Assembly (NCBI RefSeq): GCF_035084215.1
Contig: NC_090340.1
Location: 4,836,001 to 4,900,000 of the forward strand
DNA from: Heptranchias perlo
Lineage: Eukaryota
DNA: 64,000 nucleotides
Direction of reading: 5' to 3'
Positions 1-35,276 of the stretch are shown here, piece after piece. Both the position numbers and the translations under genes were made by a program. Numbering within the stretch: the first letter of the stretch is position 1; each line of letters opens with the position of its first letter. Under the pieces are notes generated by a model. That model saw nothing but the letters and a program-made list of their open reading frames with translations, ran no database searches and had not been told where the DNA came from.

Positions 1-44
1 GCTGGTAATTCTTGTCAAGCGATGCAATTTAGTCAGAATTGACG
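1..44 (+). CDS. Gene A (inhibitory-type SIRP-like Ig receptor): 3' end of transmembrane exon, LVILVKRCNLVRID(G); continues upstream of the window
   Basis: Hydrophobic run followed by basic stop-transfer residues, phase-1 donor G|GTAAGA at 44/45. Aligns residue-for-residue with the end of the gene D TM exon (ILVKRCNLVRIDG vs ITVKLSKLHRFKG). Confidence 0.65.
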
Positions 45-641
45 GTAAGAACTGACACGATCCTCATTAAGAATTAGGTTTGTTAGTTACATTTCAGCTC
101 GGCGGCAGCGAGGAGGACGGGACGGCGTATACGGCCTGGACTGGGATCTAGATTTTGGGAGCGGTGTCCGTTACACTAAGTGAGTTTATGTTCCTGGGGC
201 CGAATGTTGTGACGAGGGCCAGACCTTAAACCCAAGAGATCCCTCAGAATAATTTCAGCAGGTCTGACATTAAAGCGACCCGTAGTTTCGGTTTGAACTT
301 AGTGCTTCACAACAACTGAAGGCGGTGATGTGAATATTTTACAGTAAATGTAGGGTTGTGTCGGGAGGGGCGACAAATCTGGGGTCGAGGGCGGTGGAAC
401 TGGTGGTGGGAATGTGACACGTGGTGTTCGGTTGAAAAAAGGGTCCGTTTCTCGCCCAGCAATCGTACCGGATGTAACGGCTCAAGTTCTAATAAGGAGA
501 ATTGAGTGACCGTTCAGACCATTTTCTATTGATCGGTGATTCTGGTCAATTTTGCGGGAATGTTGGGTATATTTTGGGGGGAAAATCACGTATCTGGTTC
601 ATGTGAAATTGATCATTGTTCTAAATTTATTTCTCTACCAG

Positions 642-685
642 ACACGGAGATTAGTGAGGAGAGACCCGGCCACTTCGAGGAGCAG
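642..685 (+). CDS. Gene A cytoplasmic linker exon (D)TEISEERPGHFEEQ, phase 1 to 0
   Basis: Acceptor tttctctaccAG at 640-641, donor CAG|GTCAGT. Phases join the TM exon to the tyrosine-motif exons without stops. Confidence 0.7.
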
Positions 686-1447
686 GTCAGTGTCATACTA
701 GTGTAACAAGAAATAGACTGCTGTTGCTCAAGTAATGCAAATTTATACCACATTTATACCGGTATCACGAGGACATCAGGACGGCTCTCAGTAACTGCGG
801 AGCACACCGTCACCACTTGCGGGTTTATTGTTCCCCAGAGACCATCCCTCCACTGAAAGTGTAGTCTCTGACCTGTCAGTGCCGCGATTATATCTGTATT
901 AATGTAGCCCTCCATTTCTCGCAGGCGCTGTTGTCGATATTTATGCCTTGTCAGTGAGGTCGATTGGCTGTTCATCTATGGGGAGCGTCATAGTTTTGCT
1001 CGATCCTGTTCTCAGCTGACATCTCCACCCATGACCTTTCCAGCAGGGTCTCTGGGTGTTGACCGGGACTGACTGCTGGCCGAGATTGCCCCCCTCCTGA
1101 CCCAAAGGCACCGAAACCAATTGTCCATCCTGAGATGAGCAAGCTCAGAACTCGGAAGTGCTTTAATTACTCAATAGCACACGGGCCAGTCCTTGACCCA
1201 CAGGCCAGGCTGAGCTCTGATAAAATGGTCTGTAAATGTATATTGAAGAGAATTTCTCCGGCTGGGAATTATTTTCCTCCCTTGTCCTTATCCGGCCTTT
1301 TATTACACCGCCAGCTCCATTAGAGCAATCACCTGCACTGATCAGACTTACCCAATCCTTAACCGATGCCATTGGGTTTTAGTGGCCCTGTACGGTGCTG
1401 TTTGTGATTTGATGTCGAGTTAATCTTTCTCCAAAAACTCTCTTCTG

Positions 1448-1558
1448 GCTGTGGGAGGAAGAGCGGACGGGAGTCCGTCTTACGCTGCTATCAACCTCAG
1501 CGGTCACGGGAGCATTGGAAAACCCAGACGTGAGGAAAATAGAAACGTCTATGCCCAG
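1448..1558 (+). CDS. Gene A cytoplasmic exon with two tyrosine motifs (PSYAAI, NVYAQ); acceptor non-canonical
   Basis: Open 37 codons AVGGRADGSPSYAAINLSGHGSIGKPRREENRNVYAQ, donor CAG|GTACAG. The pyrimidine tract ends in TG rather than AG at 1446-1447. Confidence 0.6.
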
Positions 1559-1698
1559 GTACAGTCGAGAAACGGAGCAGCCCATTCCAATCAGGACTGG
1601 TCCAGTCCTTCCGTCTGACCTCAGTAATGCACATTGAAGTACTGGAACGCTTAGTGTGAGTAACATATCCTATTGATATTTCAGTGTTGCTTCCACAG

Positions 1699-1848
1699 AC
1701 CAAGCAAGAGACGGATTTTGCACTGACTTCCGCGTCTCTGGATCTGACCGGCTCCCAGGAACTGGCAAGAAGGAAACAGAAAGAAAACGTAGCGGAGTAT
1801 GCGGCGATCAGGATCAACAAGCCAAGGGAAGAATACGGGATTGTATAA
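1699..1848 (+). CDS. Gene A terminal coding exon TKQETDFALTSASLDLTGSQELARRKQKENVAEYAAIRINKPREEYGIV*
   Basis: Acceptor ttgcttccacAG, phase 0, TAA at 1846-1848. LT(S)ASL and AEYAAI resemble the SIRP-alpha LTYADL and EYASI/V motifs. Confidence 0.75.
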   Translation, partial: TKQETDFALTSASLDLTGSQELARRKQKENVAEYAAIRINKPREEYGIV

Positions 1849-2240
1849 ACACCAGCAAATGTCCAGTGATGTTAAAGTCACACGGGGGATGGCCATCTTG
1901 GTGCCTGAAGAACACACCTACTTGTATTTTTCGGGGTGTTTGGAAACCGGATTGTCATTTATTGGAATGGGAGGAGTAGCAGCTTTTACTGGCAGAGAGA
2001 AACAGCGATCTGGAGGCTGCGTTTATTCTTGAAATCTGCACTTCCAGTGAATGGAGGAGTCAATGCTTAACTCTTTTATAGGTTTCAAATGGGACCAAAG
2101 GAAATTGGAGCGTCTTGTCTCGTTGGGGGAAATCGATGAGGCCAGTTATTGTGGGTCAGTTCTGTTAATTTAGAAGGATTGAGCAATGGAGTTTATTTTG
2201 GGCATGTGTCGCGAATATACCGGAATTCGAGGAGGGTTCT

Positions 2241-3313
2241 GAATCATAGAATCATAGAATCATAGAAGTTACAACATGGAAACAGGCCCTTCGGCCCAAC
2301 ATGTCCATGTCGCCCAGTTTATACCACTAAGCTAGTCCCAATTGCCTGCACTTGACCCATATCCCTCTATACCCATCTTACCCATGTAACTGTCCAAATG
2401 CTTTTTAAAAGACAAAATTGTACCCGCCTCTACTACTGCCTCTGGCAGCTCGTTCCAGACACTCACCACCCTTTGAGTGAAAAAATTGCCCCTCTGGACC
2501 TTTTTGTATCTCTCCCCTCTCACCTTAAATCTATGCCCCCTCGTTATAGACTCCCCTACCTTTGGGAAAATATTTTGACTATCGACCTTATCTATGCCCC
2601 TCATTATTTTATAGACTTCTATAAGATCACCCCTTAACCTCCTACTCTCCAGGGAAAAAAGTCCCAGTCTGTCTAACCTCTCCCTGTAAGTCAAACCATC
2701 AAGTCCCGGTAGCATCATAGTAAATCTTTTCTGCACTCTTTCTAGTTTAATAATATCCTTTCTATAATAGGGTGACCAGAACTCTACACAGTACTCCAAG
2801 TGTGGCCTCACCAATGCCCTGTACAACTTCAACAAGACATCCCAACTCCTGTATTCAATGTTCTGACCAATGAAACCAAGCATGCCGAATGCCTTCTTCA
2901 CCACCCTATCCACCTGTGACTCCACTTTCAAGGAGCTATGAATCTGTACTCCTAGATCTCTTTGTTCTATAACTCTCCCCAACGCCCTACCATTAACGGA
3001 GTAGGTCCTGGCCCGATTCGATCTACCAAAATGCATCACCTCACATTTATCTAAATTAAACTCCATCTGCCATTCATCGGCCCACTGGCCCAATTTATCA
3101 AGATCCCGTTGCAATCCCAGATAACCTTCTTCACTGTCCACAATGCCACCAATCTTGGTGTCATCTGCAAACTTACTAACCATGCCTCCTAAATTCTCAT
3201 CCAGATCATTAATATAAATAACAAATAACAGCGGACCCAGCACCGATCCCTGAGGCACACCGCTGGACACAGGCATCCAGTTTGAAAAACAACCCTCTAC
3301 AACCACCCTCTGT
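2241..3313 (-). mobile_element. 5'-truncated CR1 LINE, intact 324-aa RT C-terminal ORF (2332-3306)
   Basis: [15 protein letters not shown] and RPHLEYC motifs; 3' octamer tail seen as (GAATCATA)n at 2241-2266. Confidence 0.95.
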
Positions 3314-3679
3314 ATTACATCTAAATATTAAATCATTATCAGGCTCCTAACGGGCCAACTGAATGGTGTTTGGTGACTGGACATAAATTACCGCGGCCCT
3401 TTCTGTGCAGAAACAACTATTCCTTCAGTTTCCTTTAATGAAATTCACACTTTCAACGTTGAGAATTCCTTTCTGTCCCGATTTTGCTCTTTCTGGATGT
3501 ATTTGACACTTTAAATCAAATCTGTCCGTGTGCCGAACATTTCCATCTCTGGGTATTTTAATTACTCAGTTTGCCTCTTGTCACAGGAATGAACCAGAAG
3601 TTTTCGAATGTGCAGTGGGACAGGTCTGGGACCTACTCCGGCTCCCTGCCTCACTGTGAAATTCAGAATTACAAAGATT

Positions 3680-5420
3680 AAATAGAATTTACAGCATCGA
3701 AACAGGCCATTCGACCCCATTAATCTGTCCTGGTGTTTATGCTTCACACGAGCCTCTTGCCATCCTACTTCATCTAACGCTATGAGCAGATCGTTCTATT
3801 CCTTTCTCCCTTGTGTACTTATCTTGCTTCCCTGAAATGCATCTACGCTATTCGCCTCAACTGCTCCACGTGGTATCAAGTTCACATTCTAATCACTCTG
3901 GGTAAAGAAGTTTCTCCTGAATTCTTTCTTGGATTTATTAGTGACTATCTTATATTTATGGCCCTTAGTATTGGACTGCCCCGCAAGTGGAAACATTTTC
4001 TCTAAGCCTACACTTTCTTACCACTTCACAATTTTAAATTCTTCTATTAACAGCAAAGTGGGAGAACCTTCACCCACGGACTGCAGCGGTTTAAGAAGGC
4101 GGATTACCATCACCGGATCAAGGGCAATTAGGGATTGGCAATAAATGCTGGCCTTGCCTGCGACACCCACATCCCATGAATGAACAAAAAAAAAAGGTCA
4201 CACCTCATCCTTCTCATTTCTAGAGAAAAGAGCCCCAGCCATTCATTCTTTCCTGATACTTAGAACCTCTCAGTCCTAGTATCATCCTTGTCAATCTTTT
4301 TTGCAACTTTTCCAATGCCTCTATATCCTTTTTGTAGTATAGTGGCCAAAACACAGTATGGTCTAACCAACGTTCTATAAAAGTTTAACATAACTTCCCT
4401 GCTATTCAATTCTATCCTTCTAGAAATGAACCCCAGTGCATAGTTTGCATTGTTATGGCCTTGTAAACTAACGTTGCTATTTTTAGTGATTTGTGAATGT
4501 GTTACCCCAGACCTCTTTTCTCCTGCATCACATTTGGACTCTTATTTCCCAAGGAGTATGCGGCCTCCTTATTCTAACTACTTTAGCACCTCACACTTAG
4601 CTATCCTAAAATTCTTTCGCTATTTACACGCTCATTCTGCAAGATTTTTAGCGTCTTCCTGGATTTTGTTGCAGTCTTGTTTAGTATTAACGAAACCCCA
4701 CAATTTTAAAATTGTATTTCCGATTCCTGAGTTCCAATCATTCATAAAAATAGTGAACAACAGTGGTCCCAGCACCGATCCCTTTGGAACACCACTTCCC
4801 AGCTTCCGTCAGTCTGACTAACTCTCTTTATCCCCTACTCTCTGTGTTCTGTTTTGTAGCCAGCTTGCTATCCATTTTAATTCTTGTCCCGACTCCACAT
4901 GCTCTGTCCTTAGTCATGACTTTACCATGTGGTAACTCATCGAAGTCCGTTTGAAAATCCAAGTATACTACATCTACTACATTACCCTTGTCTACTCTTT
5001 CTGTTACTTCTTCAATGAATTCAATAAGGTTGGACAACCATGACCTTCCCTTTTGAAATCCGTATTGACTATTCTTCATTATATTTTCGGTTTCTAGATA
5101 TATTTCTATTGCATCTTTGAGTAAAGATTATCTATCCTACTACCGATGAAAAGCCAACTGGTCGGTAGTTCCCCGGATTTGCTCTTTCGCTTTTTTAAAT
5201 GTAGGAATAAAATTAACTGTCATCCAGTCCTCTGGCGCTATACCGTTTTCTAACGAATATTTATAAATATATAATAGTGCCTCTCTGATCTGTTCCCTGG
5301 CTTCTTTTAGTTCGCACGGATATCATGCATCCAGACCAAGGGTTTTAGACTCTCTAAGTTTAATTGGTTTATCAATCATCTCCCCCTTTCCTACCTTAAA
5401 TGTCTTGATATCTTTTTGAT
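3680..5420 (-). mobile_element. Degenerate CR1 ORF2 fragment, interrupted at about 4050-4195 by a short (+) 3' tail of LINE family B
   Basis: ORF 4828-5079 QYGFQKGRS..VYLDFQ. The insert matches the 3' end of the 36961-39357 element and ends in poly(A). Confidence 0.8.
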
Positions 5421-5999
5421 CACGTACATTACATGTGTTTGAAGAGCTGTATTTGTACTTCGATTACTTACACATTTACATTAGATAGGATTTTCCTCAC
5501 AATCCCAAACGGTGACACTGCTCCCTGACGCTGGATTACACGGGCTGCTGGGCTAGCCAGGGCTAAGGTCGGCTAACTCGATGAAGAGAGTTATCAACAT
5601 GTTACCGATCTGCGTAACGTCTGGGAGGCGGATCGTTACCAGATCGAGAATGTTCTGGACCTCTGCTTCTGTGCGTGAACTGGATCGTGAATCGTGTACT
5701 TCAGCCCTGGAGTGTACGGGTAGCCTGGAATGTCTGCCTTCTGTTATCGGTACCGGTAAAGATCAGAAATCAGAGTGGAGAGGATAAGAGGAATTTAATT
5801 GCAAGACATTACTGCCGGAGTTTAGTGTAGGAACCCGCACCGCAGTGTGATTTAGTCGCACTAACTTGGTAGGGGGGAATAAGACGTGGAAGCAGTAAGC
5901 AAAGTAAAAGGGACACGGGTTTTAGGGGAGATAAAGAAAGCATGAAAGTCATAAAGTAAACCAGAAAGAGGAGAATTAGAACGTGTAAGGATACCAAAC

Positions 6000-7020
6000 A
6001 GAGAAGCAGGTTTGAGATGTATGTTGCTTAATGCACGATGTATTGTGAATCAAACTGGTGAGCGAGGGACACAAAATCCTGTGGTAGATGTTCGATGTCA
6101 CAGACTTAATAAAGTCTCAGTTTAGGCTAAGGCAGGACTGGGAGCTGAACTTTCCTGGTTCCAAAATACTCCAGTAGGATAAAGTAGGAAAAAGGGAGTC
6201 AGGGTGATAGTATTAATGAAAGATTCCATTACAGTTGGAGGATAGAGCAATGGTATAGGGATGGATCAAAAGCCAAATTTGTTTGCTTATAATTAAGAAA
6301 CAGGAATTTGTCTATTGGGAAAATACTATCGACCATCAGCGAGTGGAAAGGAGATAAAGTAGCGAAATGTAGACAGATAGGAGAAGTGTGCAGATGCTAT
6401 AGAACCTTCATGAAAGATGACTTCAATTATCCAAAGAAGGAATGGAATAAAAGTATTGGAGAAAGGGATGGGATTCTACATTGTGGCGCAGACTGTTTTA
6501 TAGTTCAATTTGCGTTCAATCCAATAAGGAAGGGTATAGTACTGGTTATAGTTCTAGCGAATTAAATGGGATAGATAGATAATAGAAGTTTCGGTGAACA
6601 TCTGGAAGACATAAAATGATATAAAAATTGAAAAGGAAAGGGAACCAATAAAAAAATGATTGGATTTAAGACAACTTCGACGGTATAGTAATGGAATTAA
6701 CAGATACATTAGCAAAACATATTCGTTGGTAAGATAGTACACAAAAGTTCAAAGACAAGATGGTTGGAGTACAAACTAGATACTTTCCCGCATGAAGTAA
6801 GGGGTACAGCAAAAACTGGAGTGTGGCGAATGGACAGAGTAATTCTAATAAAACTGAGTCTTAGGGGTGCACAGCAAGCCGAGAGCTAATAACACAAAAT
6901 AAAATCATTCAGAGCATGAAAAATATAAAGGAGAAGCAAAATAAAGTGTACAAAGGTTAGGAGAGGTTAATAGAGAGCCATATAACCAGGTTCACGGATG
7001 ACACAAAGAGATGTGGCAAA
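6000..7020 (+). mobile_element. Old degenerate CR1 ORF2 (endonuclease region)
   Basis: DFNYP-like motif in ORF 6308-6565; A-rich CR1-like composition. Confidence 0.55.
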
Positions 7021-7865
7021 GAATCATAGCATCATAGACTGGTTACAGCACAGAAGTAGGCCATGCGTCCCATCGAGCCGGAGCCAGATCCGGTCGTTTT
7101 ATGTGCAATCCAGTTAGTCCCATTCGCCTGCTCTTTCCCGGTAGACCTACAATATTTTTCCCTTCAAGTATTTATCCAATTCCTTTAAAGTCATGATTAA
7201 ATCTGCTTCCACCACCTTTCAAGCAGTGCATCCAGACCATAAATACTCGTTGCATAAAAAAGATTTTGCTCATTTAACCTTTGGTTCCTTTGCTAATCAC
7301 CTTAAATCTGTATCCTCTGGTTCTCGACCCTTCCGTCAATGTGAATAGTTTCCCTTTATTTACTTTATCAGAACCCTTCATGTCTTTGAACACTTCTATC
7401 ATTTCTCCTATAAACCTTCTCCCCAAAGGAGAAAAATCCCAGCTTCTACAGTCTATCCACGTGATAGAAATCCCTCATCCCTGGAACAATTCCAGTAAAT
7501 CTCCTCTGCACTCTTTCCAAAGCCTTCACATCCTTCCAAAAGTGTAGTGCCCAGAATTGGACGCAATACTCTAGCTGTGGCCGAACCGGTGTTTTCTAAA
7601 GCTTCAACATAACATCCTTGCATTTGAACCCTATGCCTCTCTTTTCAAGCCCAGGATCACGTATGATGTTTTAACTGCTTTCTTAGCCTGTCATGCACTT
7701 CAAAAGATCTATGCACATATACCCCCAGGTCTCTCTGTTTCTACACCCCCTTTAGAATTGTACCATTCAGCTTATTTTGCCTCTCCTAATTCATTCTATC
7801 AAAATTTATCACTTCGTACTTCGCTGTAAAATATCATCCACCACCTGTCCGCCAATTCCACCAGC
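7021..7865 (-). mobile_element. Degenerate CR1 3' fragment
   Basis: gaatcatag tail and a CR1 3' UTR stem; antisense RT C-terminal similarity. Confidence 0.75.
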
Positions 7866-7987
7866 ATGGGATCATAGAATTGTTGACATTTACGGCACAG
7901 AAGGAGGTCATTCGGCCCATCGTGTCTGTGCCGGCCGGAAAAAAAGATATCCAGCCTAATCCAACTTTCCAAATCTTGGTCCACAGG

Positions 7988-10900
7988 GGTTTTTTTTTAT
8001 TCGTTCATGGGATGTGGGCGTCGCTGGTGAAGCCGGCATTTATTGCCCATCCCTAATTGCTCTTGAGAAGGTGGTGGTGAGCCGCCTTCTTGAACCGCTG
8101 CAGTCCGTATGGTGACGGTTCTCCCACAGTGCTGTTAGGAAGGGAGTTCCAGGATTTTGACCCAGCGACAATGAAGGCACGGCGAAATATTTCCAAGTCA
8201 GGATGGTGTGTGACTTGGAGGGGAACGTTCAGGTGGAGTTTTTCCCATGTGCCTGTTGCTCTTGTCCTTCCAGGTGGTAGAAGTCGCGGGTTTGGGAGGT
8301 GCTGACGAAGAAGCCTTGGCGAGTTGCTGCAGTGCATCCTGTGGATGGTACACACTGCAGCCACTGTGCGCCGATGGTGAAGAGAGTGAATGTTTAGGGT
8401 GGTGGATGGTGTGCCAATCAAGCGGGCTGCTTTATCTTGGATGGTGTCGAGCTTCTTGAGTGTTGTTGGAGCTGCACTCATCCAAGCAAGTGGAGAGTAT
8501 TCCATCACACTCCTGACTTGTGCATTGCAGATGGTGAAAATGCTATGGGGAGTCTGGAGGTGTGACACTCGCCGCAGAGTACCCAGCCTCTGACCTGCTC
8601 TCGTAGCCACAGTATTTATATGGCTGGTCCAGTTAAGTTTCTGGTCAATGGTGACCCCCAGGATGTTGAAGGTGGGGGATTCGGCGATGGTAATGCCATT
8701 GAATGTCAAGGGGAGGTGGTTAGACTCCCTCTTGTTGGAGATGGTCATTGCCTGGCACTTATCTGGCGCGAATGTTACTTGCCACTTATGAGCCCAAACC
8801 TGGATGCTGTCCAGGTCTTGCTGCATGCGGGCTCGGACTGCTTCATTATTTTAGGTGTTGCGAATGGAACTGAGCACTGTGCAATCATCAGCAAACATCC
8901 CCATTTCTGACCTTATGATGGAGGGAAGGTCATTGATGAAGCAGCTGAAGATGGTTGGGCCGAGGACACTGCCCTGAGAAAGTACTGCAACAATGCCCTG
9001 GGGCTGAGATGATTGGCCTCCAACAACCACTACCATCTTCCTTTGTGCTAGGTATGACTCCAGCCACTGGAGTGTTTTCCCCCTGACTCCCATTGACTTC
9101 AATTTTACTAGGGCTCCTTGGTGCCACACTCGGTCAAATGCTGCCTTGATGTCAAGGGCAGTCACTCTCACCTTTGGAATTCAGCTCTTTTGTCTATGTT
9201 TGGACCAAGGCTGTAATGAGTTCTTGAGCCGAGTGGTCATGGCGGAACCCAAACTGAGCATCGGTGAGCAGGTTATTGGTGAGTAAGTGCCGCTTGATAG
9301 CACTGTCGACGACACCTTCCATCACTTTGCTGATGATTGAGAGTAGACTGATGGGGCGGTAATTAGTCGGATTGGATTTGTCCTGCTTTTTGTGGACAAG
9401 ACTTACCTGGGCAATTTTCCACATTGTCGGGTAGATGCCAGTGTTGTAGCTGTACTGGAACAGTTTGGCTGGAGGCGCAGCCAATTCTGGAGCACAAGCC
9501 TTCAGCACTACAGCTGGGATGTTGTCGGGGCCCATAGCCTTTGCTGTATCCAGTGCACTCAGCCGTTTCTTGATATCACGTGGAGTGAATCGAATTGGCT
9601 TAAGACTGGCTTCCGTGATGGTGCGGATATCGGGAACATAAGAACATAAGAAATAGGAGCAGGATTAGGCCAATCGGCCCCTCGAGCCTGCTCCGCCATT
9701 CAATAAGATCATGGCTGATCTGATCCGAACCTCAAATCTAAATTCATGTCCAATTTCCTGCCCGCTCCCCGTAACCCCTAATTCACTTTACTTCGAGGAA
9801 ACTGTCTATTTCTGTTTTAAATTTATTTAGTGATGTAGCTTCCACAGCTTCCTGGGGCAGCAAATTCCACAGACCTACTACCCTCTGAGTGAAGAAGTTT
9901 CTCCTCATCTCAGTTTTGAAAGAGCAGCCCCTTATTCTAAGATTATGCCCCCTAGTTCTAGTTTCACCCATCCGTGGGAACATCCTTACCGCATCCACCC
10001 GATCAAGCCCCTTCACAATCTTATATGTTTCAATAAGATCGCCTCTCATTCTTCTGAACTCCAATGAGTAGAGTCCCAATTTACTCAACCTCTCCTCATC
10101 TGTCCACCCCCTCATCCCCGGGATTAACCGAGTGAACCTTCTTTGTACTGCCTCGAGAGCAAGTATGTATTTTCTTAAGTATGGAGACCAAAACTGTATG
10201 CAGTATTCCAGGTGCGGTCTCACCAATACCCTATATAACTGCAGCAATATCTCCCTGTTTTTATATTCTATCCCCCTAGCAATAAAAGCCAACATTCCGT
10301 TGGCCATCTTGATCACCTGCTGCACCTGCAAACTAACTTTTTGATTTTCTTGCACTGGGACCCCCAGATCCCTTCATACTGCAGTACTTTCCAGTTCCTC
10401 GCCATTAAGATATTAACTTGCTCTGTGATTTTTCCTGCCCTAGTGCATAACCTCACATTTTCCAATATTGTATTGCATCTGCCAAATCTCCGCCCACTCA
10501 CCCAGCCTGTCTATATCCCCTTGTAGGTTTTTTATGTCCTCCTCACTCTCTACTTTCCCTCCCATCTTTGTATCATCTGCAAACTTTGATATCTTACACT
10601 CGGTCCCCTCCTCCAAATCGTTAATATAGATTGTAAAGAGTTGGGGACCCAGCACCGACCCCTGCAGAACACCACTGGCTACAGGTTGCCAGTCCGAGAA
10701 TGTACCATTTATCCCAACTCTCTGCTTCCTGTTAGATAACCAATCCTCCACCCGGTGGGACAGGACATACCCAGGGATGGTGATGGAAGAGTCTGGGACA
10801 TTGGCTGAAAGGTATGATTCTGTGAGTATGGCTATGTCATGCTGTTGCTTGACTAGTCTGTGGGACAGCTCTCCCAATTTTGAAACAAGTCCCCAGATGT

Positions 10901-11334
10901 TAGTGAGGAGAAATTTGCAGGATCGACTGGGCTTGGTTTCCCTTCGTCGTATCCGGTGCCTAGTGGTCCGATGCCGGGTGGTCTGTCCGGTTTTTTTTCT
11001 TATTATGACTTTTCGTAGCTTGATTTTACAACTGAGTGGCTTGCTAGGTCATTTCAGAGGGCATTTAAGAATCAACCACATTGCTGTGGGTCTGGAGTCA
11101 CATATAGGCCAGACCGGGTAAGGACGGCAGATTTCCTTCCCTAAAGGACATTAGTGAACCAGATGGGTCTTTACGACAATCCGGTAGTTTCATGGCTACC
11201 ATTACTGATACTAGTATTTTAATTCCAGATTTTTTATTTAATTAATTGAGTTTAATTAATTAATTGAATTTAAATTCGCCAGCTGCCGTGGCGGGATTTG
11301 AACTCATGACTCTGGATTTTTCGTCCAGGCCTCT
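7988..11334 (-). mobile_element. LINE family B (CR1-group) copy reaching a tRNA-like 5' head; middle replaced by a nested CR1
   Basis: ORFs 8053-8826, 8851-9171 and 9194-9535 are near-identical to the 765-aa ORF at 37024-39321. APE N-terminus (TNIWGL..DIAILTES) at about 10750-10910, B-box GTTCAAATCC at 11294-11303, poly(A) tail at about 7990. Confidence 0.85.
9633..10750 (-). mobile_element. CR1 LINE 3' part nested in the family B element
   Basis: ORFs 9783-10355 and 10440-10750 carry RT motifs (GVLQGSVLGP, KFADD); tail (GAACATAA)n at 9634-9650. Confidence 0.92.
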
Positions 11335-11459
11335 TGAGGTTGCCGGTTACTGCATTTCAACTTCATAACCACATAATTTTCGAATGTGATGAGGGTTTCT
11401 GCCTTTCGGGCAGTGGGTTCCAGACCCCCACCACCCTTTGGATATAAAATAATCTCCTC

Positions 11460-12734: not shown

Positions 12735-12860
12735 CAATTAGAAACTTTTCACGTAATTCAAAATAGTTCCATTTTCCCGCGGTCACCAATGAGATCTGGG
12801 TCATTGTAACTTTCAGCGTGTTGTCACATCTCCGTCCGCATACCTGCCATAAAAGTGAAC
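12735..12860 (+). promoter_or_regulatory. Putative promoter of gene B (TATA-like CATAAAA at 12848-12854 overlapping IRF-like AAAAGTGAAC)
   Basis: Motifs about 160 bp upstream of the leader ATG in unique sequence; motif match only. Confidence 0.3.
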
Positions 12861-25672: not shown

Positions 25673-25989
25673 CAATAGAGCAGTTTTATTAAGGGACTTG
25701 GAACTTCACAGCCGGTCCTGCGTGGTACCTTAAACCGTTTGATCAATTGAAGCTAATCATTTGTATACAGTTATATAGCTCCAGGGTCTTATTTCTTTGT
25801 TTCCATTTAAAGTTTATTTACTTCCCAATTTTCCGCTGATATTTCCTTTAACGAAGACGACTGCCCTCCCTTTTCTTCGCTCGTAGTCACCGCCCGTTCC
25901 CTATCTGGTCTCCCGTGACCGATTGCCATGTCCAATTCAGCTATAAAGGATCTCCATCCCACAATTCCCAATTTTATATCAGGAAATAA

Positions 25990-28790: not shown

Positions 28791-29734
28791 GGACGATTCC
28801 CAACTCTGCTTGTCCACCCAGCCTCTCCCGCCCTCCACTGCCAGTATGATGTCATATTGCTTGTTCCCAACATCTCGTCTCGGATGAGCCGTAATTTCCT
28901 TGAACTAAAAAACCAATGCACATTTTGCGCTACTGGCACAGATTAATTTGACCTCAGTCTCCTATGACATGAGATTATCACAGTACGATCACTTAGTGAT
29001 ATTGGTCTTGGGTCCTATCAGAAAACGGTGATAGGAAATTGGCAGACCATTTTACATGCCGCCAGATTTTGCTTCCCATTTGGCTGGATTTTGCTCTAAA
29101 TTTAACGGCAAGGCTAAGATCGTTCACCATTATTTTAGCGCAAATCAGACAGCAGCTTAAGGCGACCGCACGTGATCAATGAAACACTGAACTCCGGAAG
29201 TTACTGTACCAGATGCCTGCTCATCTATCAGCTTCGCGGGAAGGAGATCTCAGTGCAAGGCTCATTATTGAAATGATTGCAACAGAGTGAGGTTTCTCGA
29301 CTGCCCTGATAGAAATGAACTAATCCCTCCAGAAAAAGGTATGTCAAGTTTTTTTAAGACTAAGCAAGCTTTTAATGGCGTGGTAAGTCTGAATGACTAT
29401 CAAACAACCACTCTGGCACTGAAAATTTACTTTTACACGTGTGGAGTCTCATTCCATCACATTTTAATTGTTTTTGGACTTTTAAAATACATATTTTTAT
29501 TTATATTACTTTATCTTTCTGTCCCTTTTATCTCTGCCTTTTATTTTGGTTTCTGTAACTGATTTTACTTTACATTTACGATTCTAACTTACATTTCCTG
29601 CTCCTGTGTCTGCAGTGCTTATTAACATGCTTCAAACTGATTGGTAAGGGGATACACAGCAACTTGCCGGTTCACACAGGTTCCAGATGTCGGGGAGAGG
29701 ACACCACGCTGGATTCAGGAACAAATAAGAAAAT

Positions 29735-30066
29735 AAGAACATAAGAACTAGGAGCAGGAGTAGGCCAATCGGCCCCTCGAGCCTGCTCCGCCATTCAATA
29801 AGATCATGGCTGATCTGATCCTAACCTCAAATCTAAATTCATGTCCAATTTCCTGCCCGCTCCCCGAAACCCCTAATTCCCTTTACTTCGAGGAAACTGT
29901 CTATTTCTGTTTAAAATTTATTTAATGATGTAGCTTCCACAGCTTCCTGGGGCAGCAAATTCCACAGACCTACTACCCTCCGAGTGAAGAAGTTTCTCCT
30001 CATCTCAGTTTTGAAAGAGAAGCCCCTTATTCTAAGATTATGCCCCCTCGTTCTAGTTTCACCCAG
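29735..30066 (-). mobile_element. CR1 3' fragment almost identical to 9633-9970
   Basis: Direct sequence match including the 3' UTR. Confidence 0.9.
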
Positions 30067-31269
30067 TGTGAGGAACTTGCAGTGCAGAAGCCCATGAAAA
30101 GTCTAATAGCACGTCCAAGACTAACCAGCGGCTGGTTCGCTGCTCAGAGCAAAATCCAAGTAGTAGACCACATGGGGGTAGATTTTCTTCTTCACTGCCT
30201 TGACGGCAATGTGGTAAAAGGCCAATCATATGAACTTTATAGAACTGGCCTAATGTTTATTCCAATGATTTCAGTCGAATGAATATCAGACTGGTTCTAC
30301 AATGATTGAAATCCTGCAGATTTTGCTCTGCGCTGGTCCTCCCAGCGACACTTAACATCCGATTGGTAAAGGCCAAAACAAGCCCCATTTACTTTTCCTG
30401 TTGCTAAGGAAAAGTGAATATATGGTGGGCGCTCCCACCATAAGGATATGGACATGTTGATGAACTCAGGTAAAGAAAACTGGCCGAATGTCTCTGCAGC
30501 GCTGTGATTGAACGATGTATGAATATCAACAATGATCAAATATATAGGGAAGTGCGATTCCAACAATCGTTAAGAAATGATAATATCTGAGAACAAGTCT
30601 TCATAACGGAAGTTGTAATTTTGGATTGGTGTTCTGGAGAATTTGCTTCATTTTCTGCGGGTGTCCAGGAGAAAGTTCAGATTTCGTTCTTCTTAAATGT
30701 TTTACGTGTGGTTACGCCCCATCTTTCCACGCCTCCCCCGCGGGATATTAACTAAAGGGAGAAAGTTTGCAGTGTGGCATATTGCACACTGAGGTAATCG
30801 AACAAGTGAACTTGACGAATCAAATAGACTTTGACTGTTCTCATTTTCCTCTGTTTGTGAGTGCAGGAATATTAATCAATTATTGTGGAAACCACAGACT
30901 TTGATGTGTACAATACAATTTTAATAAACAGTAAAGTGGACATTTCCTGTAATATAATCACGGTAGTAATTTCCTTAATTTACATTGGAGAAAGTTGAGT
31001 GAAAAACCGAATCTGATGCAATGAAATGCTTAAATTTGACGGTAGAGACCAATTGAACAGGTGGGTTAACCACAAACCTGATCCCAGCTAGTCAGCAAGC
31101 TACTCTTCTTGTTAACTAACTGCAGCTGGAGTGTGTAATAAAACGGGTTTGCTGAGAACACCAATATCTGGATAATTTACATCAGCTTTCATTTCCAATT
31201 GAAAACATCTTAGTTTCAATAAGCCTTTGAATTTCTTGATTTTTATTGGTGTAATTCAGTAACAAGATT

Positions 31270-33776
31270 GAAATACAGGCAAAAGACAGAAAGATGCAAT
31301 AACTATAGAGTAGTGATAATGGGGTCTTTAATTACCCCAATATAGACAGAGACAATGAAAATGTAAAGTGCAAAGAGGGGGAGGAATTCCTAAAATGTGT
31401 TCGTCAGAACTTCCTGGAACAGAGTGTTTCCAGTGCAACCAGGAAGGAAGCGGTGCTGGATCTAGTTCTGGAGAATGATGTGGGGCAGGTGGAGCATGCT
31501 TCAGTGGGGGAGCTTTTGGGAAACAGTGATCATTATCATTAGGTTTAGAATATTTATGGAAAGGGACAAGGAACAATCAATTGTGAAAATGCTTAACTCA
31601 AGGAGGGCAAATTTCAGTGAATTAAAAAGGAATTTTATCCAGGTAGATTGGAATCAGAAATTGGTCGGCAAAACAGTAAATTAACAATGTGAGGCCTTCA
31701 AGGAGGAGTTGGTTCAGATACGGGGGGTTGAGAAAGGAAGGGCAAGCAAAGCTAGAGCTCCCTGGATGACTAAAGATATAGAGATTAATATGAAACAGAA
31801 AAAGGAGGCTTAAGTCGAATGTAAGATTCATAAAGCAGTAGAGAACCAAGCTGACTACAGAAAGTACAGAGGAGACCTAAAAACGGAATAAGGGGGAGCA
31901 AAGAGAGAGTATGAGAACACATTAGCGGCTAACATAAAAGGGAACCCTTTTATGAACATATAACTAGTAAAAGGGTAGAAGAAAGCCTGGGACCGATTAG
32001 GGACAAAAAACAGATCTTCTTATGGAGTCAGAGGGTATGGCTGAGGTATTAAATGAGTACTTCACATCCGTCTTCACTGGAGAAGAGGATGCTGCTATTG
32101 TAGCTGTAAAGGAGGAGGTAGTAGCGATATTGGATAGGATAAAAATATATAAAGAGGGGGCATTAAAAGATTGGCGGTACCCAAAGTAGAAAAGTCATCC
32201 GGTCCAGATGGGATGCACCCTAGGTTACTGAGGGAAGTAAGGGTGGAAATTGCAAAGGCTCTGGCCACAATTTTGCAATCCTCATTAGATATGGAGATGT
32301 TGCAGGAGGACTGGAGGATTGCAAATATTACACTCGTGTTCAAAAAATGGGAGATGAATAAACCCGGCAATTACAGGCCAATCAGCCTAACGTCAGTGGT
32401 GGGGAAACTTTCAGAGGCAATAATCCGGGATAAAATTAATTGGCACTTGAAAAATTACGGGCCAATAAATGCAAGTCAGCATAAATGTGTTAAAGGAAAA
32501 TCGTGTTTGACTAACTTGATTGAGTTATTTGATGAAGTAACGGAGATGGTTGATGAGGATAGTGCGGTTGATGTTGTGTATATGGACTTTCAAAAGACAT
32601 TTGATGAAGTACCCTATAATAGACTTGTTAGGAAAATTAAAGCCCATGGGATTAAAGGCACTGTGGCAACGTGGATACAAAATTGGCTAGGGGATAGAAA
32701 GCAGAGAGTAGTGATGAACACTTGTCTTTCAGACTAGAGGGAAGTATACAGTGGTGTACCCGAGGGGTCAGTATTAGGACCACCACTCTTTTTGATATAT
32801 ATTAATGGCCTGGACTTGGGTATAGAGGGTATAATTTCCAAGTTTTCAGATGACATGAAACTTGGCAATGTAGTAAACAATGTGGAGGATAGTAACAGAC
32901 TTTATGAGGACAAAGACATACTGGTGAAATGGGCAGACACATGGCAGATGACATTTAATGCAGAGAAGTGTGAAGTGATGAATTTTGGTGGGAAGAATGA
33001 GGAGAGGCAATATAAACTAAATGGTACAATTTTCAAGGGGGTGCATGAACAGAGAGACCTGGGGGTCACATACACAAATCTTTGAAAGTAGCAGGACAAA
33101 TTGAGGAGGCTGTAAAAAAAGCATATGGGATCCTGGGTTTATTAATAGAGACATAGATTACAAAAGCAAGGACATTTTGCTAAACCTTTATAAAACACTG
33201 GTTAGGCCTCAACTGGAGTATTGTGGTCAATTCTGGGCACCAGACTTTAGGAAGGATGTCAAGGCCTTAGAGGTGGTGCAGAAGAGATTTACTAGAATGG
33301 TGCCAGAGACGAGGGATTTCAGTTATATGGATAGATTGGAGAAACTGGGTTGTTCTCCTTGGAACAGAGATGGTTAAGGGCAGATTTGATAGAGGTGTTA
33401 AAAATCATGACGGTTTTGACAGAATAAATCAGGAGAAACTGTTTCCAGTGGCAGAAGTGTCGGTAACCAGAGGGCACAGTTTTATAGTGATCAGCAAAAG
33501 AGCTAGAGGTGACATGAGGAAATATTTCCTTATGCAGCGAGTTGTGATGATCTGGAATGCACTGTTTGAAAGGATGGTGGAAGCAGATTCCATCGTAACT
33601 TTCACAAGGCTATTGGATAAATACTCAAGGGGGAAAAAGTACAGGGCTATGGGGAAAGAGCAGAGGAATTAGACTAATTGGATAGCTCTTTCCAAGTGCC
33701 GGCACAGGCACGATGGGCCGAATGGTCTCATCCTGTGCTGTACCTACTCTGATACTATGATACTATGATACTATGA
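31270..33776 (+). mobile_element. Long degenerate CR1 ORF2 plus 3' UTR
   Basis: LDLVL/SDH endonuclease end; RT ORFs 32171-32737, 32792-33085, 33177-33672; (TACTATGA)n tail. Confidence 0.92.
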
Positions 33777-34198
33777 AGACATGGAAGAATACTTTTCGCA
33801 CAAATGTAGTCAAAACGCCAATGCTGGACAACATTTAGAAAGATTGTGAATGTATTCCCGGAAAATATTTAACGTGTTAGCCTTTTCCTTATCTTTATTC
33901 CGAAGACCTTGCTACAAATTCAAATACAAGAATAACTTGTGGTAATATTCCGGAATGGAACTTGTGAAGTTTTGAATGACTCTCTTCGTTCCAGTGTCCG
34001 CAGCCGGGGAGCGGATGTGGAGATGTTGCATCAACAGGTACAAATTGTGTGGCGCCTTTCAGCTACATTCTACACGGAGTGTCATTTTTAAAAACACTGA
34101 TAAAGGAAAATGCAAAAAGTATTAAAAATTCTCCATTTCCCGAGATGGAAACTCTCAGTGATCAGCGACTTGAACAGAAGTAAATTCTATTGGCTTTT

Positions 34199-34648
34199 TT
34201 ATTTTGTGAAATGGGTTCCCAACACACTGGCCGGGTCCTTGAACTCAATCTGCCCGTACACTGTGGTCTCCTCCTGCCCGTACACTATGGTCTCCTCCTG
34301 CCCATACACTATGGTCTCCTCCTGCCCGTACACTATGGTCTCCTCCTGCCCGTACACTATGGTCTCCCCCTGCCCATGCACTATGGTCTCCCCCTGCCCG
34401 TACACTATGGTCTCCTCCTACGCATACACTATGGTCTCCTCCTGCCCGTACACTATGGTCTCCTCCTGCCCGTACACTATGGTCTCCTCCTGCCCGTACA
34501 CTATGGTCTCCTCCTGCCCATACACTATGGTCTCCTCCTGCCCGCACACTATGGTCTCCTCCTGCCCTTTAAGTTCTGGATATTCTTTCTGACCGACGAA
34601 CTCTAGATCACAGTAGATCATTCTTTCTTCAGCTACCATTTGCGGAAT
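34199..34648 (-). CDS. Gene D terminal cytoplasmic exon IPQMVAEERMIYCDLEFVGQKEYPELKGQ(EETIVYGQ)x13-IEFKDPASVLGTHFTK*, with in-frame TAG at 34418-34420
   Basis: Minus-strand acceptor ttctgaacactattacAG, phase 0. Colinear with the gene A tyrosine exons. AATAAA on the minus strand at 33894-33899. Confidence 0.7.
34250..34567. repeat. 24-bp tandem repeat, 13 units plus 6 bp (CTGCCCGTACACTATGGTCTCCTC)
   Basis: Units start at 34250 and every 24 bp thereafter, with few substitutions. Confidence 0.98.
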
Positions 34649-35162
34649 CTGTAATAGTGTTCAGAAATAATGTTAATATTCTGTCTTCACCAGTAAGCAG
34701 ATTGCTACATCACACAACCTTGAATAGATCGGCATAGGAAGAGGCACTTGCGAACTGTGAGTACCGACCAGACCTTCTTTCACCCGCCTGAAGCAGTTCC
34801 TGCATACACTCGGTACACCTCAATTCTGAGCCATGCTGCCGCTTTCATCATGGTGTTCTGCCAATTTTCCAACGAAATTAAAATGAGAGACTGGAAGATT
34901 CCCATGAAATTTCACAGCCCATCTGTCCATGGTGAGTTTCAGTAAAATATTGTGGGGCTTTTTTCCCCAGAAACCTAATTGGCCCGCTGCACAGATTTTC
35001 TGATTTACAGAAGAGTCGACAATTGTTCGTAGGTCTGATCGAATCTGTTTATCTCGATTGGTAAAATTATTATATTTTTCTTTTTTACAGTAATATTTTA
35101 GAGTAATATTTTGAAACTTGAAAACAATCACGAATCAACTAGAGAAAAAGGGGGATACGTAC

Positions 35163-35276
35163 CTTTGAATCTATGCAATTTCGATAGTTTCACTGTGATG
35201 CTCACCAGTACCAGAATTAACAGTCCAAACCCGAAACAGAGATACATCAACACGAGTGGAAAACCGCGATCGGTAT
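35163..35276 (-). CDS. Gene D transmembrane exon (D)TDRGFPLVLMYLCFGFGLLILVLVSITVKLSKLHRFK(G)
   Basis: Acceptor tgtattttgcAG, donor G|GTACGT, 114 bp, phase 1-1; uncharged helix; TDR-FP start shared with the gene B TM exon. Confidence 0.85.

What the first reader, a model, noticed from the sequence alone, without database searches (positions are those of the whole stretch)
1..35276. Paired inhibitory/activating SIRP-like receptor cluster in a probable shark genome
Seen: three related TM exons. Genes A and D have tyrosine-motif tails (D's complete TM is uncharged; only the end of A's is in the window). Gene B has Arg in the TM and a short tail without an ITIM. B and D TM exons are 115 and 114 bp and begin TDR(G)FP; A and D end VK-xx-L-x-R-xx-G. 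A relic lies between B and D. Known: mammalian SIRP, LILR/PIR and teleost NITR form birth-and-death clusters of paired receptors. Inference: a cartilaginous-fish paired-receptor family with V-C1 ectodomains. Most of these exons are too short for the ORF track.
Basis: partly seen in the sequence, partly recalled or inferred. Interest (0 to 1): 0.85.

Follow-up and report, generated by a model that had tools for sequence, protein, structure and literature searches.

The report
Paired VJ-C1 immune receptors, sevengill shark
This stretch of sevengill-shark DNA holds one intact 'on-switch' immune receptor gene, the tail of an apparently damaged 'off-switch' relative and an orphan piece of a third. 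They belong to a shark-wide family whose on and off versions carry almost the same outer domain; the family is real, but public records give it wrong names.

Summary
The sequence features are real. The window is Heptranchias perlo. Gene B (13018-22805, +) is an intact five-exon gene: leader, VJ-type V, C1, Arg-transmembrane exon and a short tail with no tyrosine. Each exon matches RefSeq XP_067853493.1 at 100%; RefSeq calls that protein 'RLA class II DP alpha-like'.

RNA-type contigs of a roughly 96% identical copy show the C1>TM and TM>last-exon splices. The '22.7-kb relic' is therefore B's last coding exon, a fossil of the ITIM exon.

Gene A (1-1848) is the 3' end of an inhibitory paralogue, 80-86% identical to XP_067853508.1. 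Its first ITIM exon follows TG instead of AG, and the second ITIM has Tyr>Ser.

Gene D (35276-34418, -) has an inhibitory-type TM exon and tyrosine-rich exons enlarged by a 24-bp repeat. No V or C1 exon for it lies within 28.7 kb upstream.

Across cartilaginous fishes the family has activating and inhibitory forms. In H. perlo, partners share 96-99% of V but about 90% of C1.

'Paired receptor cluster' is supported. 'SIRP-like' holds only as an analogy, because there is one C1. Kinship with NKp30/NCR3 is unresolved.

Other first-reader notes flag similar VJ-C1 receptors elsewhere in this genome. Interest is moderate.

The parts
1..44 (+). Gene A, 3' end of the uncharged (inhibitory-type) TM exon: ..LVILVKRCNLVRID + g, donor GT at 45-46, phase 1
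   Evidence: hmmsearch against the family's TM-plus-tail profile gives E 2.3e-3. 11/14 identical to P0011, LVILVKRCNFVRTE.
642..685 (+). Gene A exon 5, 44 nt, phase 1 to 0: (D)TEISEERPGHFEEQ; AG acceptor, CAG|GTCAGT donor
   Evidence: tblastn to P0011 gives E 1.7e-5 at 80% identity.
1448..1558 (+). Gene A exon 6, 111 nt: AVGGRADGSPSYAAINLSGHGSIGKPRREENRNVYAQ (ITIM SPSYAAI; NVYAQ in place of TVYAQ). It is preceded by TG (1446-1447) where an AG acceptor is expected, and no in-frame AG lies upstream.
   Evidence: tblastn to P0011 gives E 1.3e-14 at 79% identity. hmmsearch gives E 4.3e-11.
1699..1848 (+). Gene A exon 7 with stop TAA at 1846-1848: TKQETDFALTSASLDLTGSQELARRKQKENVAEYAAIRINKPREEYGIV*. 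The ITIM tyrosine is replaced (LTSASL for LTYASL; TCC for TAC).
   Evidence: tblastn to P0011 gives E 2.2e-20 at 86% identity. hmmsearch gives E 9.2e-16.
12765..12851 (+). Decayed C1-like relic (SSIFPRSPMRSGSL*LSACCHISVRIPAI), about 170 bp upstream of B's leader exon. It resembles the C1 F-G strands of a divergent subfamily.
   Evidence: tblastn with P0024 gives E 0.009 against the whole window and 1.8e-4 against a 2-kb subregion. It contains a stop.
13018..13072 (+). Gene B leader exon: MSTRDVLRYLSALAIICT + g, donor GT, phase 1
   Evidence: These residues are the first 18 of P0178 as printed, read by eye. The script's own check of this exon missed because its start coordinate was off by one.
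13273..13593 (+). Gene B V exon, 321 nt, phase 1/1, VJ type with a germline-joined J motif (NGNGTELIVY)
   Evidence: Pfam V-set 2.4e-8. 100% identical to P0178 residues 20-125. AlphaFold model pLDDT 89.7.
17534..17815 (+). Gene B C1 exon, 282 nt, phase 1/1
   Evidence: Pfam C1-set 1.9e-12. 100% identical to P0178 residues 127-219. Donor joint 17815|20548 seen in an RNA-type contig.
20548..20662 (+). Gene B TM exon, 115 nt, phase 1 to 2: (A)STDRFPTFNFCRFLLGLMVILLGTTIIVDHLKSVPFL. Arg sits in the outer third of the span and Asp-His at the inner end.
   Evidence: 100% identical to P0178 residues 221-257. Matches Arg-TM exons of Carcharodon, Chiloscyllium, Scyliorhinus, Heterodontus and Callorhinchus. 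Both splice joints appear in RNA-type contigs.
22736..22805 (+). Gene B last coding exon: (S)NTTDDKLAAAAPDFTDSRKAAN*, stop TAA at 22803-22805, with 3' UTR running to at least 23399. It is homologous to the start of inhibitory exon 7 (KLTYASLDFTxSQK) but has lost the tyrosine.
   Evidence: Joint 20662|22736 in RNA-type contigs of runs X5 and X7. 100% identical to P0178 residues 259-280. hmmsearch E 4.6e-3. blastp-short E 0.007.
35163..35276 (-). Gene D TM exon, 114 nt, phase 1/1, uncharged: (x)TDRGFPLVLMYLCFGFGLLILVLVSITVKLSKLHRFK + g
   Evidence: hmmsearch against the inhibitory TM-plus-tail profile gives E 9.5e-5.
35009..35052 (-). Candidate D exon 5, 44 nt, phase 1 to 0: (D)KQIRSDLRTIVDSS, donor GTAAAT. 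It is the only 44-nt open AG..GT interval that would put the downstream tyrosine exons in frame. It has no homology support.
   Evidence: Enumeration of AG..GT intervals. It has the same length and phase as family exon 5. This part is inference only.
34719..34787 (-). D exon-6-like segment a: AGERRSGRYSQFASASSYADLFK (canonical ITIM SSYADL); CAG acceptor, AAG|GT donor, phase 0/0
   Evidence: The motif resembles family exon 6 (xxGSPSYADLxF in Mobula and Scyliorhinus). No significant E-value.
34418..34648 (-). D exon-6-like segment b. IPQMVAEERMIYCDLEFVGQKEYPELKGQEETIVCGQ is 37 aa, the length of family exon 6, with Tyr at the same position 12. EETIVYGQ repeats follow, ending at TAG 34420-34418.
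   Evidence: hmmsearch aligns it to family exon 6, E 0.21, which is weak.
34250..34567 (-). 24-bp tandem repeat, 13.2 copies, 93% matches. It amplifies the end of D's exon-6-like segment (unit GQEETIVY, which corresponds to EDRTVYAQ).
   Evidence: Tandem Repeats Finder, score 559. Alignment.

Best explanation
The region is part of a tandem cluster, on a 66.5-Mb Heptranchias perlo chromosome, of germline-joined (non-rearranging) VJ-C1 immunoglobulin-superfamily receptors. The family comes in two signalling forms with near-identical ligand-binding domains.

Gene B is an intact activating form. After the leader, V and C1 exons, its membrane span carries an arginine near the outer leaflet and ends in a conserved Asp-His. 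Its tail of about 30 residues has no tyrosine. By analogy with NKp30, NKp46 and SIRP-beta, the arginine is expected to dock an ITAM adaptor of the FcR-gamma, CD3-zeta or DAP12 kind (inferred).

Inhibitory members (P0011, P0179 and P0010 in the same species) have an uncharged span. Their three-exon tail carries SPSYAAI and LTYASL ITIMs plus TVYAQT and AEYAAI motifs, which are expected to recruit SHP-type phosphatases (inferred).

B's last exon is a still-spliced fossil of the ITIM exon with the tyrosine gone. That points to an activating gene derived from an inhibitory-type gene body.

Gene A is the 3' end of an inhibitory-type paralogue that looks disabled. Gene D is an inverted 3' half of a more divergent inhibitory-type gene; its tyrosine exon has been enlarged by a minisatellite, and its ectodomain exons are not within 28.7 kb.

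Shown here: the exon structures, the identity to RefSeq, the splicing of the short exons in a near-identical copy, the family's distribution, and the V identity between partners. Inferred: adaptor and phosphatase coupling, expression in leukocytes, and pseudogene status of A and D.
For: - B's V, C1, TM and last exons each equal RefSeq P0178 (XP_067853493.1, 280 aa) at 100%, and the junction codons fit. The leader's 18 residues match the P0178 sequence printed.
- Pfam finds V-set and C1-set.
- GT..AG joints 17815|20548 and 20662|22736 appear in RNA-type contigs X5 and X7 and not in DNA run X1.
- The family reaches sharks, rays and chimaera: 181 cluster representatives at E<=1e-3, and nearly all those looked up are chondrichthyan.
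- Between H. perlo partners, V identity is 96% (P0178/P0011) and 99% (P0001/P0179), against 89-90% for C1.
- Activating and inhibitory forms intermix on the V tree, and the hexanchiform clade has support 98/99.
- The Arg-TM type is conserved as far as Callorhinchus.
- A's tail exons match P0011 at E 1e-14 to 2e-20.
- D's TM matches the inhibitory profile at E 9.5e-5.
- B's last exon matches the ITIM exon at E 4.6e-3 and E 0.007.
Against: - The RNA-type contigs differ from the window by about 4% (5/66, 4/114 and 23-29/666 letters), and the DNA run does not carry those letters. They come from a paralogue (the differences fit P0001) or a divergent allele, so gene B's own transcription is not shown. 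The runs' RNA label is itself a guess.
- A's and D's ectodomains are outside the window, so their relation to B's is not tested directly.
- A's pseudogene status rests on a lost acceptor, a Tyr>Ser change and its absence from the proteins my searches returned. No expression data bear on it.
- D's tail similarity is weak (E 0.21).
- No binding, adaptor or phosphatase data exist for any member.
Confidence: 0.8

Rival explanations
1. One reading: A and D are working inhibitory receptors and B is their activating partner, so the window holds a complete functional paired set.
For: - A's exons 5 and 7 and all of D's exons have canonical splice sites, and all are open.
- A keeps SPSYAAI, AEYAAI and EEYGIV.
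- D can be read in frame through a 44-nt candidate exon, giving SSYADL, MIYCDL, KEYPEL and five TIVYGQ motifs.
Against: - A's exon 6 is preceded by TG, with no in-frame AG upstream and a TAA in frame at 1421-1423.
- A's second ITIM reads LTSASL.
- None of the H. perlo proteins my searches returned matches A's tail.
- No V or C1 exon lies on either strand between 35277 and 64000.
- D's candidate exon 5 has no homology support.
- B's V is closest to P0011, which is not gene A.
Confidence: 0.15
2. The family is simply the shark NCR3 (NKp30) family already described in nurse shark (eight divergent subtypes; Kinlein et al. 2021, Immunogenetics 73:333). On this view nothing here is new beyond a species record.
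For: [quoted passage not shown]
- The best Foldseek match of the V model is human NKp30, 3NOI (E 1.5e-8, TM 0.69), with 3PV6 and 6YJP at ranks 10 and 15.
- V-only relatives with the same LTYxSxxF tail motif exist in coelacanth and Narcine.
- NKp30 also has a VJ exon and an Arg in its TM (my own knowledge).
Against: - The Foldseek E-values are tied with VNAR, PD-L1 and VL domains. By VIA-align every Z lies at 13.6-14.8 and NKp30 is not in the top 50.
- phmmer and profile searches of solved structures do not list NKp30 in the top 60.
- Tetrapod NKp30 has no C1 domain.
- The published shark NCR3 genes are MHC-linked (white shark chromosome 19, between AIF1 and DDAH2). An unchecked scan note puts this genome's MHC class III block on another sequence piece.
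- The paper and the MT914154-61 sequences could not be read here.
Confidence: 0.4
3. D is a complete gene whose V and C1 exons lie more than 28.7 kb upstream, beyond the window, separated by recent LINE insertions.
For: - D's TM exon has intact splice sites and phase, and the tail can be read open.
- The interval 36-64 kb is dominated by LINE debris, including a 765-aa open ORF2 at 37024-39321.
- Other scan notes describe such receptor genes spread over 16-22 kb of transposons (unchecked).
Against: - B's introns are 0.2-4 kb.
- D's tail holds an in-frame TAG inside an expanding minisatellite.
- None of the roughly 180 family proteins stored here contains D's TM.
Confidence: 0.3
4. Activating and inhibitory forms are alternative splice products of one gene rather than separate paired genes.
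For: - Callorhinchus P0173 (Arg-TM) and P0174 (ITIM tail) have identical V domains.
- Isoforms that skip the TM exon exist in Heterodontus and Chiloscyllium (P0013 and P0019).
Against: - No inhibitory-type TM or tail exon lies between or after B's exons on the plus strand.
- H. perlo partners differ at 1-4% in V and about 10% in C1, so they are separate genes.
Confidence: 0.05

Closest known systems
NKp30 / NCR3 family (mammalian NKp30; multigene NCR3 families of Xenopus and nurse shark)
   Same: A germline-joined VJ-type V domain in one exon. An arginine in the TM of the activating form. Multigene families with highly divergent members in cold-blooded vertebrates. Human NKp30 is the top Foldseek hit of the V model. 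NCBI names the V-only models NCR3-like.
   Different: A C1-set domain sits between V and the membrane. Inhibitory members have ITIM tails. MHC linkage is not shown for this cluster. Sequence searches do not single NKp30 out.
SIRP family (SIRP-alpha, -beta, -gamma)
   Same: Paired-receptor logic: near-identical V domains on an ITIM-tailed member and on a basic-TM member with a short tail. The V has a J-like motif and is followed by a C1-set domain. NCBI auto-names several members 'SIRP-like'.
   Different: One C1 domain, not two. Arg near the outer leaflet rather than the SIRP-beta lysine. No sequence affinity to SIRP in searches of solved structures. Orthology and CD47-type ligands are untested.
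Teleost NITRs and skate MDIRs (paired innate IgSF receptors of fishes)
   Same: Rapidly duplicating clusters with activating (charged TM) and inhibitory (ITIM) members. NITR V domains are also VJ-like.
   Different: NITRs are V or V-I and MDIRs are built from CD300/pIgR-type domains (my own knowledge; MDIR is mentioned in PMC3031540). Neither has a C1-set domain.
UrIg / UrIg2 (non-rearranging shark antigen-receptor-like genes)
   Same: Non-rearranging VJ exon followed by C1-set domain(s), restricted to cartilaginous fish (PMC12227049). UrIg2 C domains are among the best C1 matches (9dmx, E 2e-15).
   Different: UrIg has three C domains and is secreted by liver. UrIg2 has 9-11 C domains. Neither is reported in the text read here as an activating/inhibitory pair with a TM Arg or an ITIM tail. 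The V domain here does not hit UrIg2 in the top 60.
KIR, LILR/PIR and CEACAM paired receptors of tetrapods
   Same: Birth-and-death clusters. Activating genes derive from inhibitory ones and keep fossil tail exons. Ligand-binding domains are homogenised between partners.
   Different: Those use C2/I-set or CEACAM-type N domains, not a VJ-C1 antigen-receptor-like ectodomain. There is no orthology.

Membership tests
Paired activating/inhibitory IgSF receptors (functional class) | Members with near-identical ectodomains | tested here: met
   H. perlo P0178 (gene B) against P0011: V 96%, C1 89%. P0001 against P0179: V 99%, C1 90%. Activating and inhibitory forms intermix on the V tree.
Paired activating/inhibitory IgSF receptors (functional class) | Opposite signalling modules: a basic TM residue with a short tail, against an uncharged TM with ITIMs | tested here: met
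   B has Arg in the TM and a tail with no tyrosine. P0011, P0179 and P0010 have an uncharged TM with SPSYAAI and LTYASL. These are motifs only; no signalling was measured.
Paired activating/inhibitory IgSF receptors (functional class) | Genes clustered in one locus | tested here: inconclusive
   A and B lie in tandem 11 kb apart and D is convergent 11 kb beyond B (this window).
SIRP family | V-C1-C1 ectodomain (three Ig domains) | tested here: not met
   One V and one C1 exon lie between the leader and TM exons. P0178 is 280 aa.
SIRP family | Specific sequence affinity to SIRP V or C1 domains | tested here: not met
   No SIRP chain appears among the 60 best solved-structure matches for V, for C1 or for the V profile. 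The 'SIRP-like' names are NCBI auto-names that alternate with tapasin-, CD276-, B7H6- and MHC-like names.
SIRP family | Lys-TM/DAP12 coupling (beta form) and CD47 binding (alpha form) | not testable with these tools
   These need biochemistry.
NKp30 / NCR3 family | Single-exon VJ-type V domain | tested here: met
   The V exon 13273-13593 ends ..GKISNGNGTELIVY with the G-x-G bulge motif. Its best sequence matches are TCR V-alpha with J aligned.
NKp30 / NCR3 family | V domain clusters specifically with NKp30 | tested here: inconclusive
   Foldseek ranks 1, 9, 10 and 15 are NKp30 (3NOI, 3PV6, 6YJP), but their E-values are tied with VNAR, PD-L1 and VL. VIA-align Z is tied at 13.6-14.8 and NKp30 is not in the top 50. 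NKp30 is not in the phmmer top 60.
NKp30 / NCR3 family | Basic residue in the TM of the activating receptor | tested here: met
   FNFCRFLLGL.. in B, conserved in activating members of five other species.
NKp30 / NCR3 family | Linkage to the MHC class III region | not testable with these tools
   White shark NCR3 genes lie between AIF1 and DDAH2 on chromosome 19 (supplement of PMC10751288). The only indication for this genome is an unchecked scan note that places its class III block on another piece.
UrIg / UrIg2 | VJ followed by three or more C domains; secreted, or a very long stalk | tested here: not met
   Gene B has a single C1, a TM exon and a short tail. UrIg architecture is taken from PMC12227049.

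The most novel reading that the evidence does not exclude
A chondrichthyan-wide family of VJ-C1 receptors with antigen-receptor architecture, not yet formally described and perhaps not MHC-linked, works as an NK-like paired system.
- Gene conversion aimed at the V exon keeps each activating gene matched to an inhibitory partner (V 96-99% against C1 about 90%).
- The activating genes still splice a fossil ITIM exon, which records their descent from inhibitory genes.
- The Arg-TM module itself is older than the shark-chimaera split.

This would be a non-rearranging V-C1 receptor family already used for self/pathogen discrimination in the oldest jawed vertebrates.
Probability: 0.35. Interest if true: 0.7.

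Novelty: new member of a known kind. Interest (0 to 1): 0.5.

Why it matters
Few NK-type or other innate paired receptors are known in cartilaginous fishes, the oldest lineage with immunoglobulin-, TCR- and MHC-based immunity. This family has the same domain plan as one antigen-receptor chain (a germline-joined VJ exon plus one C1). It also has activating and inhibitory versions, and it is present from chimaeras to sharks and rays.

That bears on two questions. One is how early the paired-receptor strategy arose. The other is what non-rearranging VJ-C1 genes did before, or beside, RAG-based receptors.

On the practical side, public annotation scatters the family under at least eight unrelated names (MHC class I, MHC class II, tapasin-related, CD276, B7H6-like, SIRP-like, Ig lambda-like, NCR3-like). 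A correct family definition would improve shark immunogenome annotation.

The locus also offers clean natural examples of receptor decay and remodelling: a lost acceptor, a lost ITIM tyrosine, a fossil ITIM exon and a minisatellite-expanded tyrosine motif.

Tried and rejected
- A second V or C1 domain in the window, for A's or D's ectodomain. tblastn with B's own domains, with 25 and then about 180 family proteins, and Ig-signature regular expressions on six frames found none. A hint at 63.7 kb (VPLHCSFPI) is not an Ig domain.
- DNA similarity among the TM and tail exons of A, B and D. None was found with blastn at word size 7. Local alignments of A's exons against D's region score no better than shuffled sequence. 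D is therefore not a recent copy of A.
- An exon-5-like 39-nt interval in D (34857-34819). Rejected because it carries an in-frame TGA.
- Linking the family to tetrapod NKp30 or SIRP by sequence. The profile search returned only chondrichthyan and coelacanth proteins. Solved-structure profile hits were swamped by multi-Ig proteins. The ESM Atlas gave only generic V-set clusters.
- The structural second look by VIA-align did not discriminate among V domains.
- Literature: Flajnik 2012, Ohta & Flajnik 2015 and Kinlein 2021 are not held. LOC ids of family members were not found in the stored part of the MBE 2023 supplement.
- Rfam on the very high-depth repeat in B's last intron found nothing.
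- Exons were searched and compared one by one, and full-length comparisons used database proteins only.

Full report
**What is in the sequence.** The window has no N runs. It is largely LINE and reverse-transcriptase debris. Six-frame scans find exactly one V-type and one C1-type Ig domain in all 64 kb.

Reading the DNA gives a plus-strand gene, B, with canonical phase-1 Ig exon structure:
- leader 13018-13072
- V 13273-13593
- C1 17534-17815
- TM 20548-20662

Pfam confirms V-set (2.4e-8) and C1-set (1.9e-12). The V exon ends in a germline-joined J motif (NGNGTELIVY), and its best solved-structure matches are TCR V-alpha chains aligned through J.

The TM exon reads STDRFPTFNFCRFLLGLMVILLGTTIIVDHLKSVPFL, with an arginine in the span.

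**Species, and gene B's annotation.** The V exon retrieved shark proteins, the closest from Heptranchias perlo. A look-up of their 90% clusters produced P0178 (XP_067853493.1 = XP_067853497.1, 280 aa).

Comparing exon by exon, B's V, C1, TM and last exons are each 100% identical to P0178 (residues 20-125, 127-219, 221-257 and 259-280). The junction codons give V, V, A and S as required. The leader's 18 residues are the first 18 of P0178 as printed; the script's check of that exon missed because my start coordinate was off by one.

So the window is H. perlo, and gene B is already in RefSeq under the misleading automatic name 'RLA class II histocompatibility antigen, DP alpha-1 chain-like'. I did not search a joined spliced model. 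Only single exons and database proteins were used.

**Are the short exons spliced?** Runs from the sample that also gave the DNA runs were found. They were laid on 17400-23399.

Two RNA-type contig sets (X5 and X7) carry two GT..AG joints: 17815|20548 (C1 to TM) and 20662|22736 (TM to a further exon). The DNA run X1 has neither joint.

The exon starting at 22736 reads (S)NTTDDKLAAAAPDFTDSRKAAN, then stop, and it is the C-terminus of P0178. It matches the start of the family's ITIM-bearing last exon (KLTYASLDFTxSQK) with the tyrosine lost (hmmsearch E 4.6e-3; blastp-short E 0.007). The 'relic' downstream of B is therefore B's real last coding exon, a fossil ITIM exon.

One caveat applies. The contigs differ from the window by about 4%, and the DNA run lacks those letters. 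The differences fit the paralogue P0001, which has four amino-acid changes in the last 22 C1 residues against five nucleotide differences in the contig. The splicing is thus shown for a near-identical copy, not strictly for B, and the runs' RNA label is itself a guess.

**Gene A.** With H. perlo inhibitory proteins as guides, A's tail resolves into three exons:
- exon 5, 642-685: (D)TEISEERPGHFEEQ
- exon 6, 1448-1558: ..SPSYAAI..NVYAQ
- exon 7, 1699-1848: ..LTSASL..AEYAAI..EEYGIV*

They are 80-86% identical to P0011, with tblastn E down to 2e-20 and hmmsearch E 9e-16 and 4e-11.

Two lesions stand out. Exon 6 is preceded by TG rather than AG, with no in-frame AG upstream. The second ITIM tyrosine is serine (TCC for TAC). 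None of the H. perlo proteins my searches returned carries A's tail. A is therefore an inhibitory-type paralogue that looks disabled; skipping exon 6 would keep the frame but remove the first ITIM. Its V and C1 exons lie before the window and could not be read.

**Gene D.** D's TM exon matches the inhibitory TM profile (E 9.5e-5) but shows no DNA similarity to A. Downstream on the minus strand lie two exon-6-like open segments.
- The first, 34787-34719, reads AGERRSGRYSQFASASSYADLFK.
- The second, 34648-34418, begins with 37 residues (IPQMVAEERMIYCDLEFVGQKEYPELKGQEETIVCGQ). That is the length of family exon 6, with Tyr at the same position 12.

The end of the second segment (EETIVYGQ, corresponding to EDRTVYAQ) has been amplified by a 24-bp tandem repeat of 13.2 copies. 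A TAG stop falls in the seventh unit.

These segments need phase 0, but the TM exon ends in phase 1. Only a candidate 44-nt exon (35052-35009), which has no homology support, would join them in frame.

No V or C1 exon occurs on either strand from 35277 to 64000. D is an orphan 3' half. It is either a relic or a gene split by more than 28.7 kb of LINE insertions.

**The family.** Searches with P0007 and with the V exon show a large family. It occurs in sharks (Heptranchias, Heterodontus, Scyliorhinus, Chiloscyllium, Carcharodon, Cetorhinus, Mustelus), rays (Mobula, Hypanus, Hemitrygon, Narcine, Leucoraja) and the chimaera Callorhinchus. V-only relatives exist in coelacanth.

NCBI's automatic names are inconsistent: tapasin-related, SIRP-like, B7H6-like, CD276, MHC class I or II, Ig lambda and NCR3-like.

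Both signalling forms recur. The Arg-TM type (R..IIVDH) is conserved from H. perlo to Callorhinchus. Inhibitory tails share SPSYAxL/I, TVYAQ, LTYASLDF and EYAxI.

In H. perlo the activating and inhibitory partners are near-identical in V (P0178/P0011 96%; P0001/P0179 99%) but only 89-90% identical in C1. On a V tree the two forms intermix within lineages. That is the signature of paired receptors whose ligand-binding exon is homogenised.

**Classification.** SIRP membership fails on architecture, because there is one C1, and on sequence affinity.

NKp30/NCR3 kinship is plausible but unresolved. Human NKp30 is the top Foldseek hit of a confident V model (pLDDT 89.7; 3NOI, E 1.5e-8, TM 0.69). 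However, the hits are tied with other V domains, and VIA-align does not separate them.

The papers that describe shark NCR3 genes could not be read. Their existence, the MHC linkage in white shark and the nurse-shark accessions are documented.

Other first-reader notes flag many similar VJ-C1 receptors elsewhere in this genome, and an MHC class III block on another piece. I did not check these notes.

**Verdict.** The paired-receptor reading is right for the family and the cluster. In this window only the activating gene B is demonstrably intact, and it is already annotated under a wrong name. A looks disabled, and D is an orphan fragment. Mechanistic steps (ITAM-adaptor docking through the Arg; SHP recruitment by the ITIMs) are inferences from motifs.

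Noticed in passing
window 12765-12851 (+): A decayed C1-like fragment (..SGSL*LSACCHISVRIPAI) lies just upstream of gene B's leader exon. It resembles the F-G strands of a divergent subfamily (Callorhinchus P0024/P0097). It may be a remnant of an older gene at the edge of the duplication unit.
   Followed up: partly
window 34111-34203 (-): A weak V-domain F-G-like stretch (ANRIYFCSSR*SLRVSISGNGEFLILF) follows D's tandem repeat directly. tblastn gives E 0.06-0.9, so it may be chance.
   Followed up: partly
window 34560-34620 (-): D's exon-6-like segment reads YCDL-x7-YPEL. That is ITAM-like spacing (YxxL x7 YxxL) on an uncharged-TM receptor, where relatives have an ITIM followed 19 residues later by TVYAQ.
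   Followed up: no
window 21000-21600 (+), inside B's last intron: An interspersed repeat has word depth 10^4-10^6 in every run laid, DNA and RNA-type alike. There is no Rfam match. It is flanked by 29-30-bp CA-rich tandem arrays at 20893-22154.
   Followed up: partly
window 14233-14644 (+), B's V-C1 intron: A 40-bp tandem repeat array of about 5 copies, with nested 79-, 106- and 146-bp periods.
   Followed up: no
window 37024-39321 (-): An open 765-aa LINE ORF2 (endonuclease plus reverse transcriptase) lies here, and related fragments occur at 8053-9535, 56645-57489 and elsewhere. That suggests recent retrotransposition into the interval where D's ectodomain exons would be expected.
   Followed up: no
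proteins P0013, P0019 (Heterodontus, Chiloscyllium) and P0173/P0174 (Callorhinchus): Annotated isoforms skip the TM exon and join C1 straight to the ITIM tail. In Callorhinchus an Arg-TM protein and an ITIM-tail protein have identical V domains, so alternative splicing or very recent conversion may add to the pairing.
   Followed up: partly
H. perlo proteins P0178, P0011, P0001, P0179: Between activating and inhibitory partners the V exon is 96-99% identical while C1 is only 89-90% identical. That suggests exon-limited gene conversion of the ligand-binding domain.
   Followed up: partly
P0001 against window 20655-20662: The paralogue P0001 ends at ..SVPF, inside the TM exon. Gene B reads on (..SVPFL-S-NTTDD..) into the fossil ITIM exon. 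The two activating genes therefore differ in whether that exon is coding or 3' UTR.
   Followed up: no
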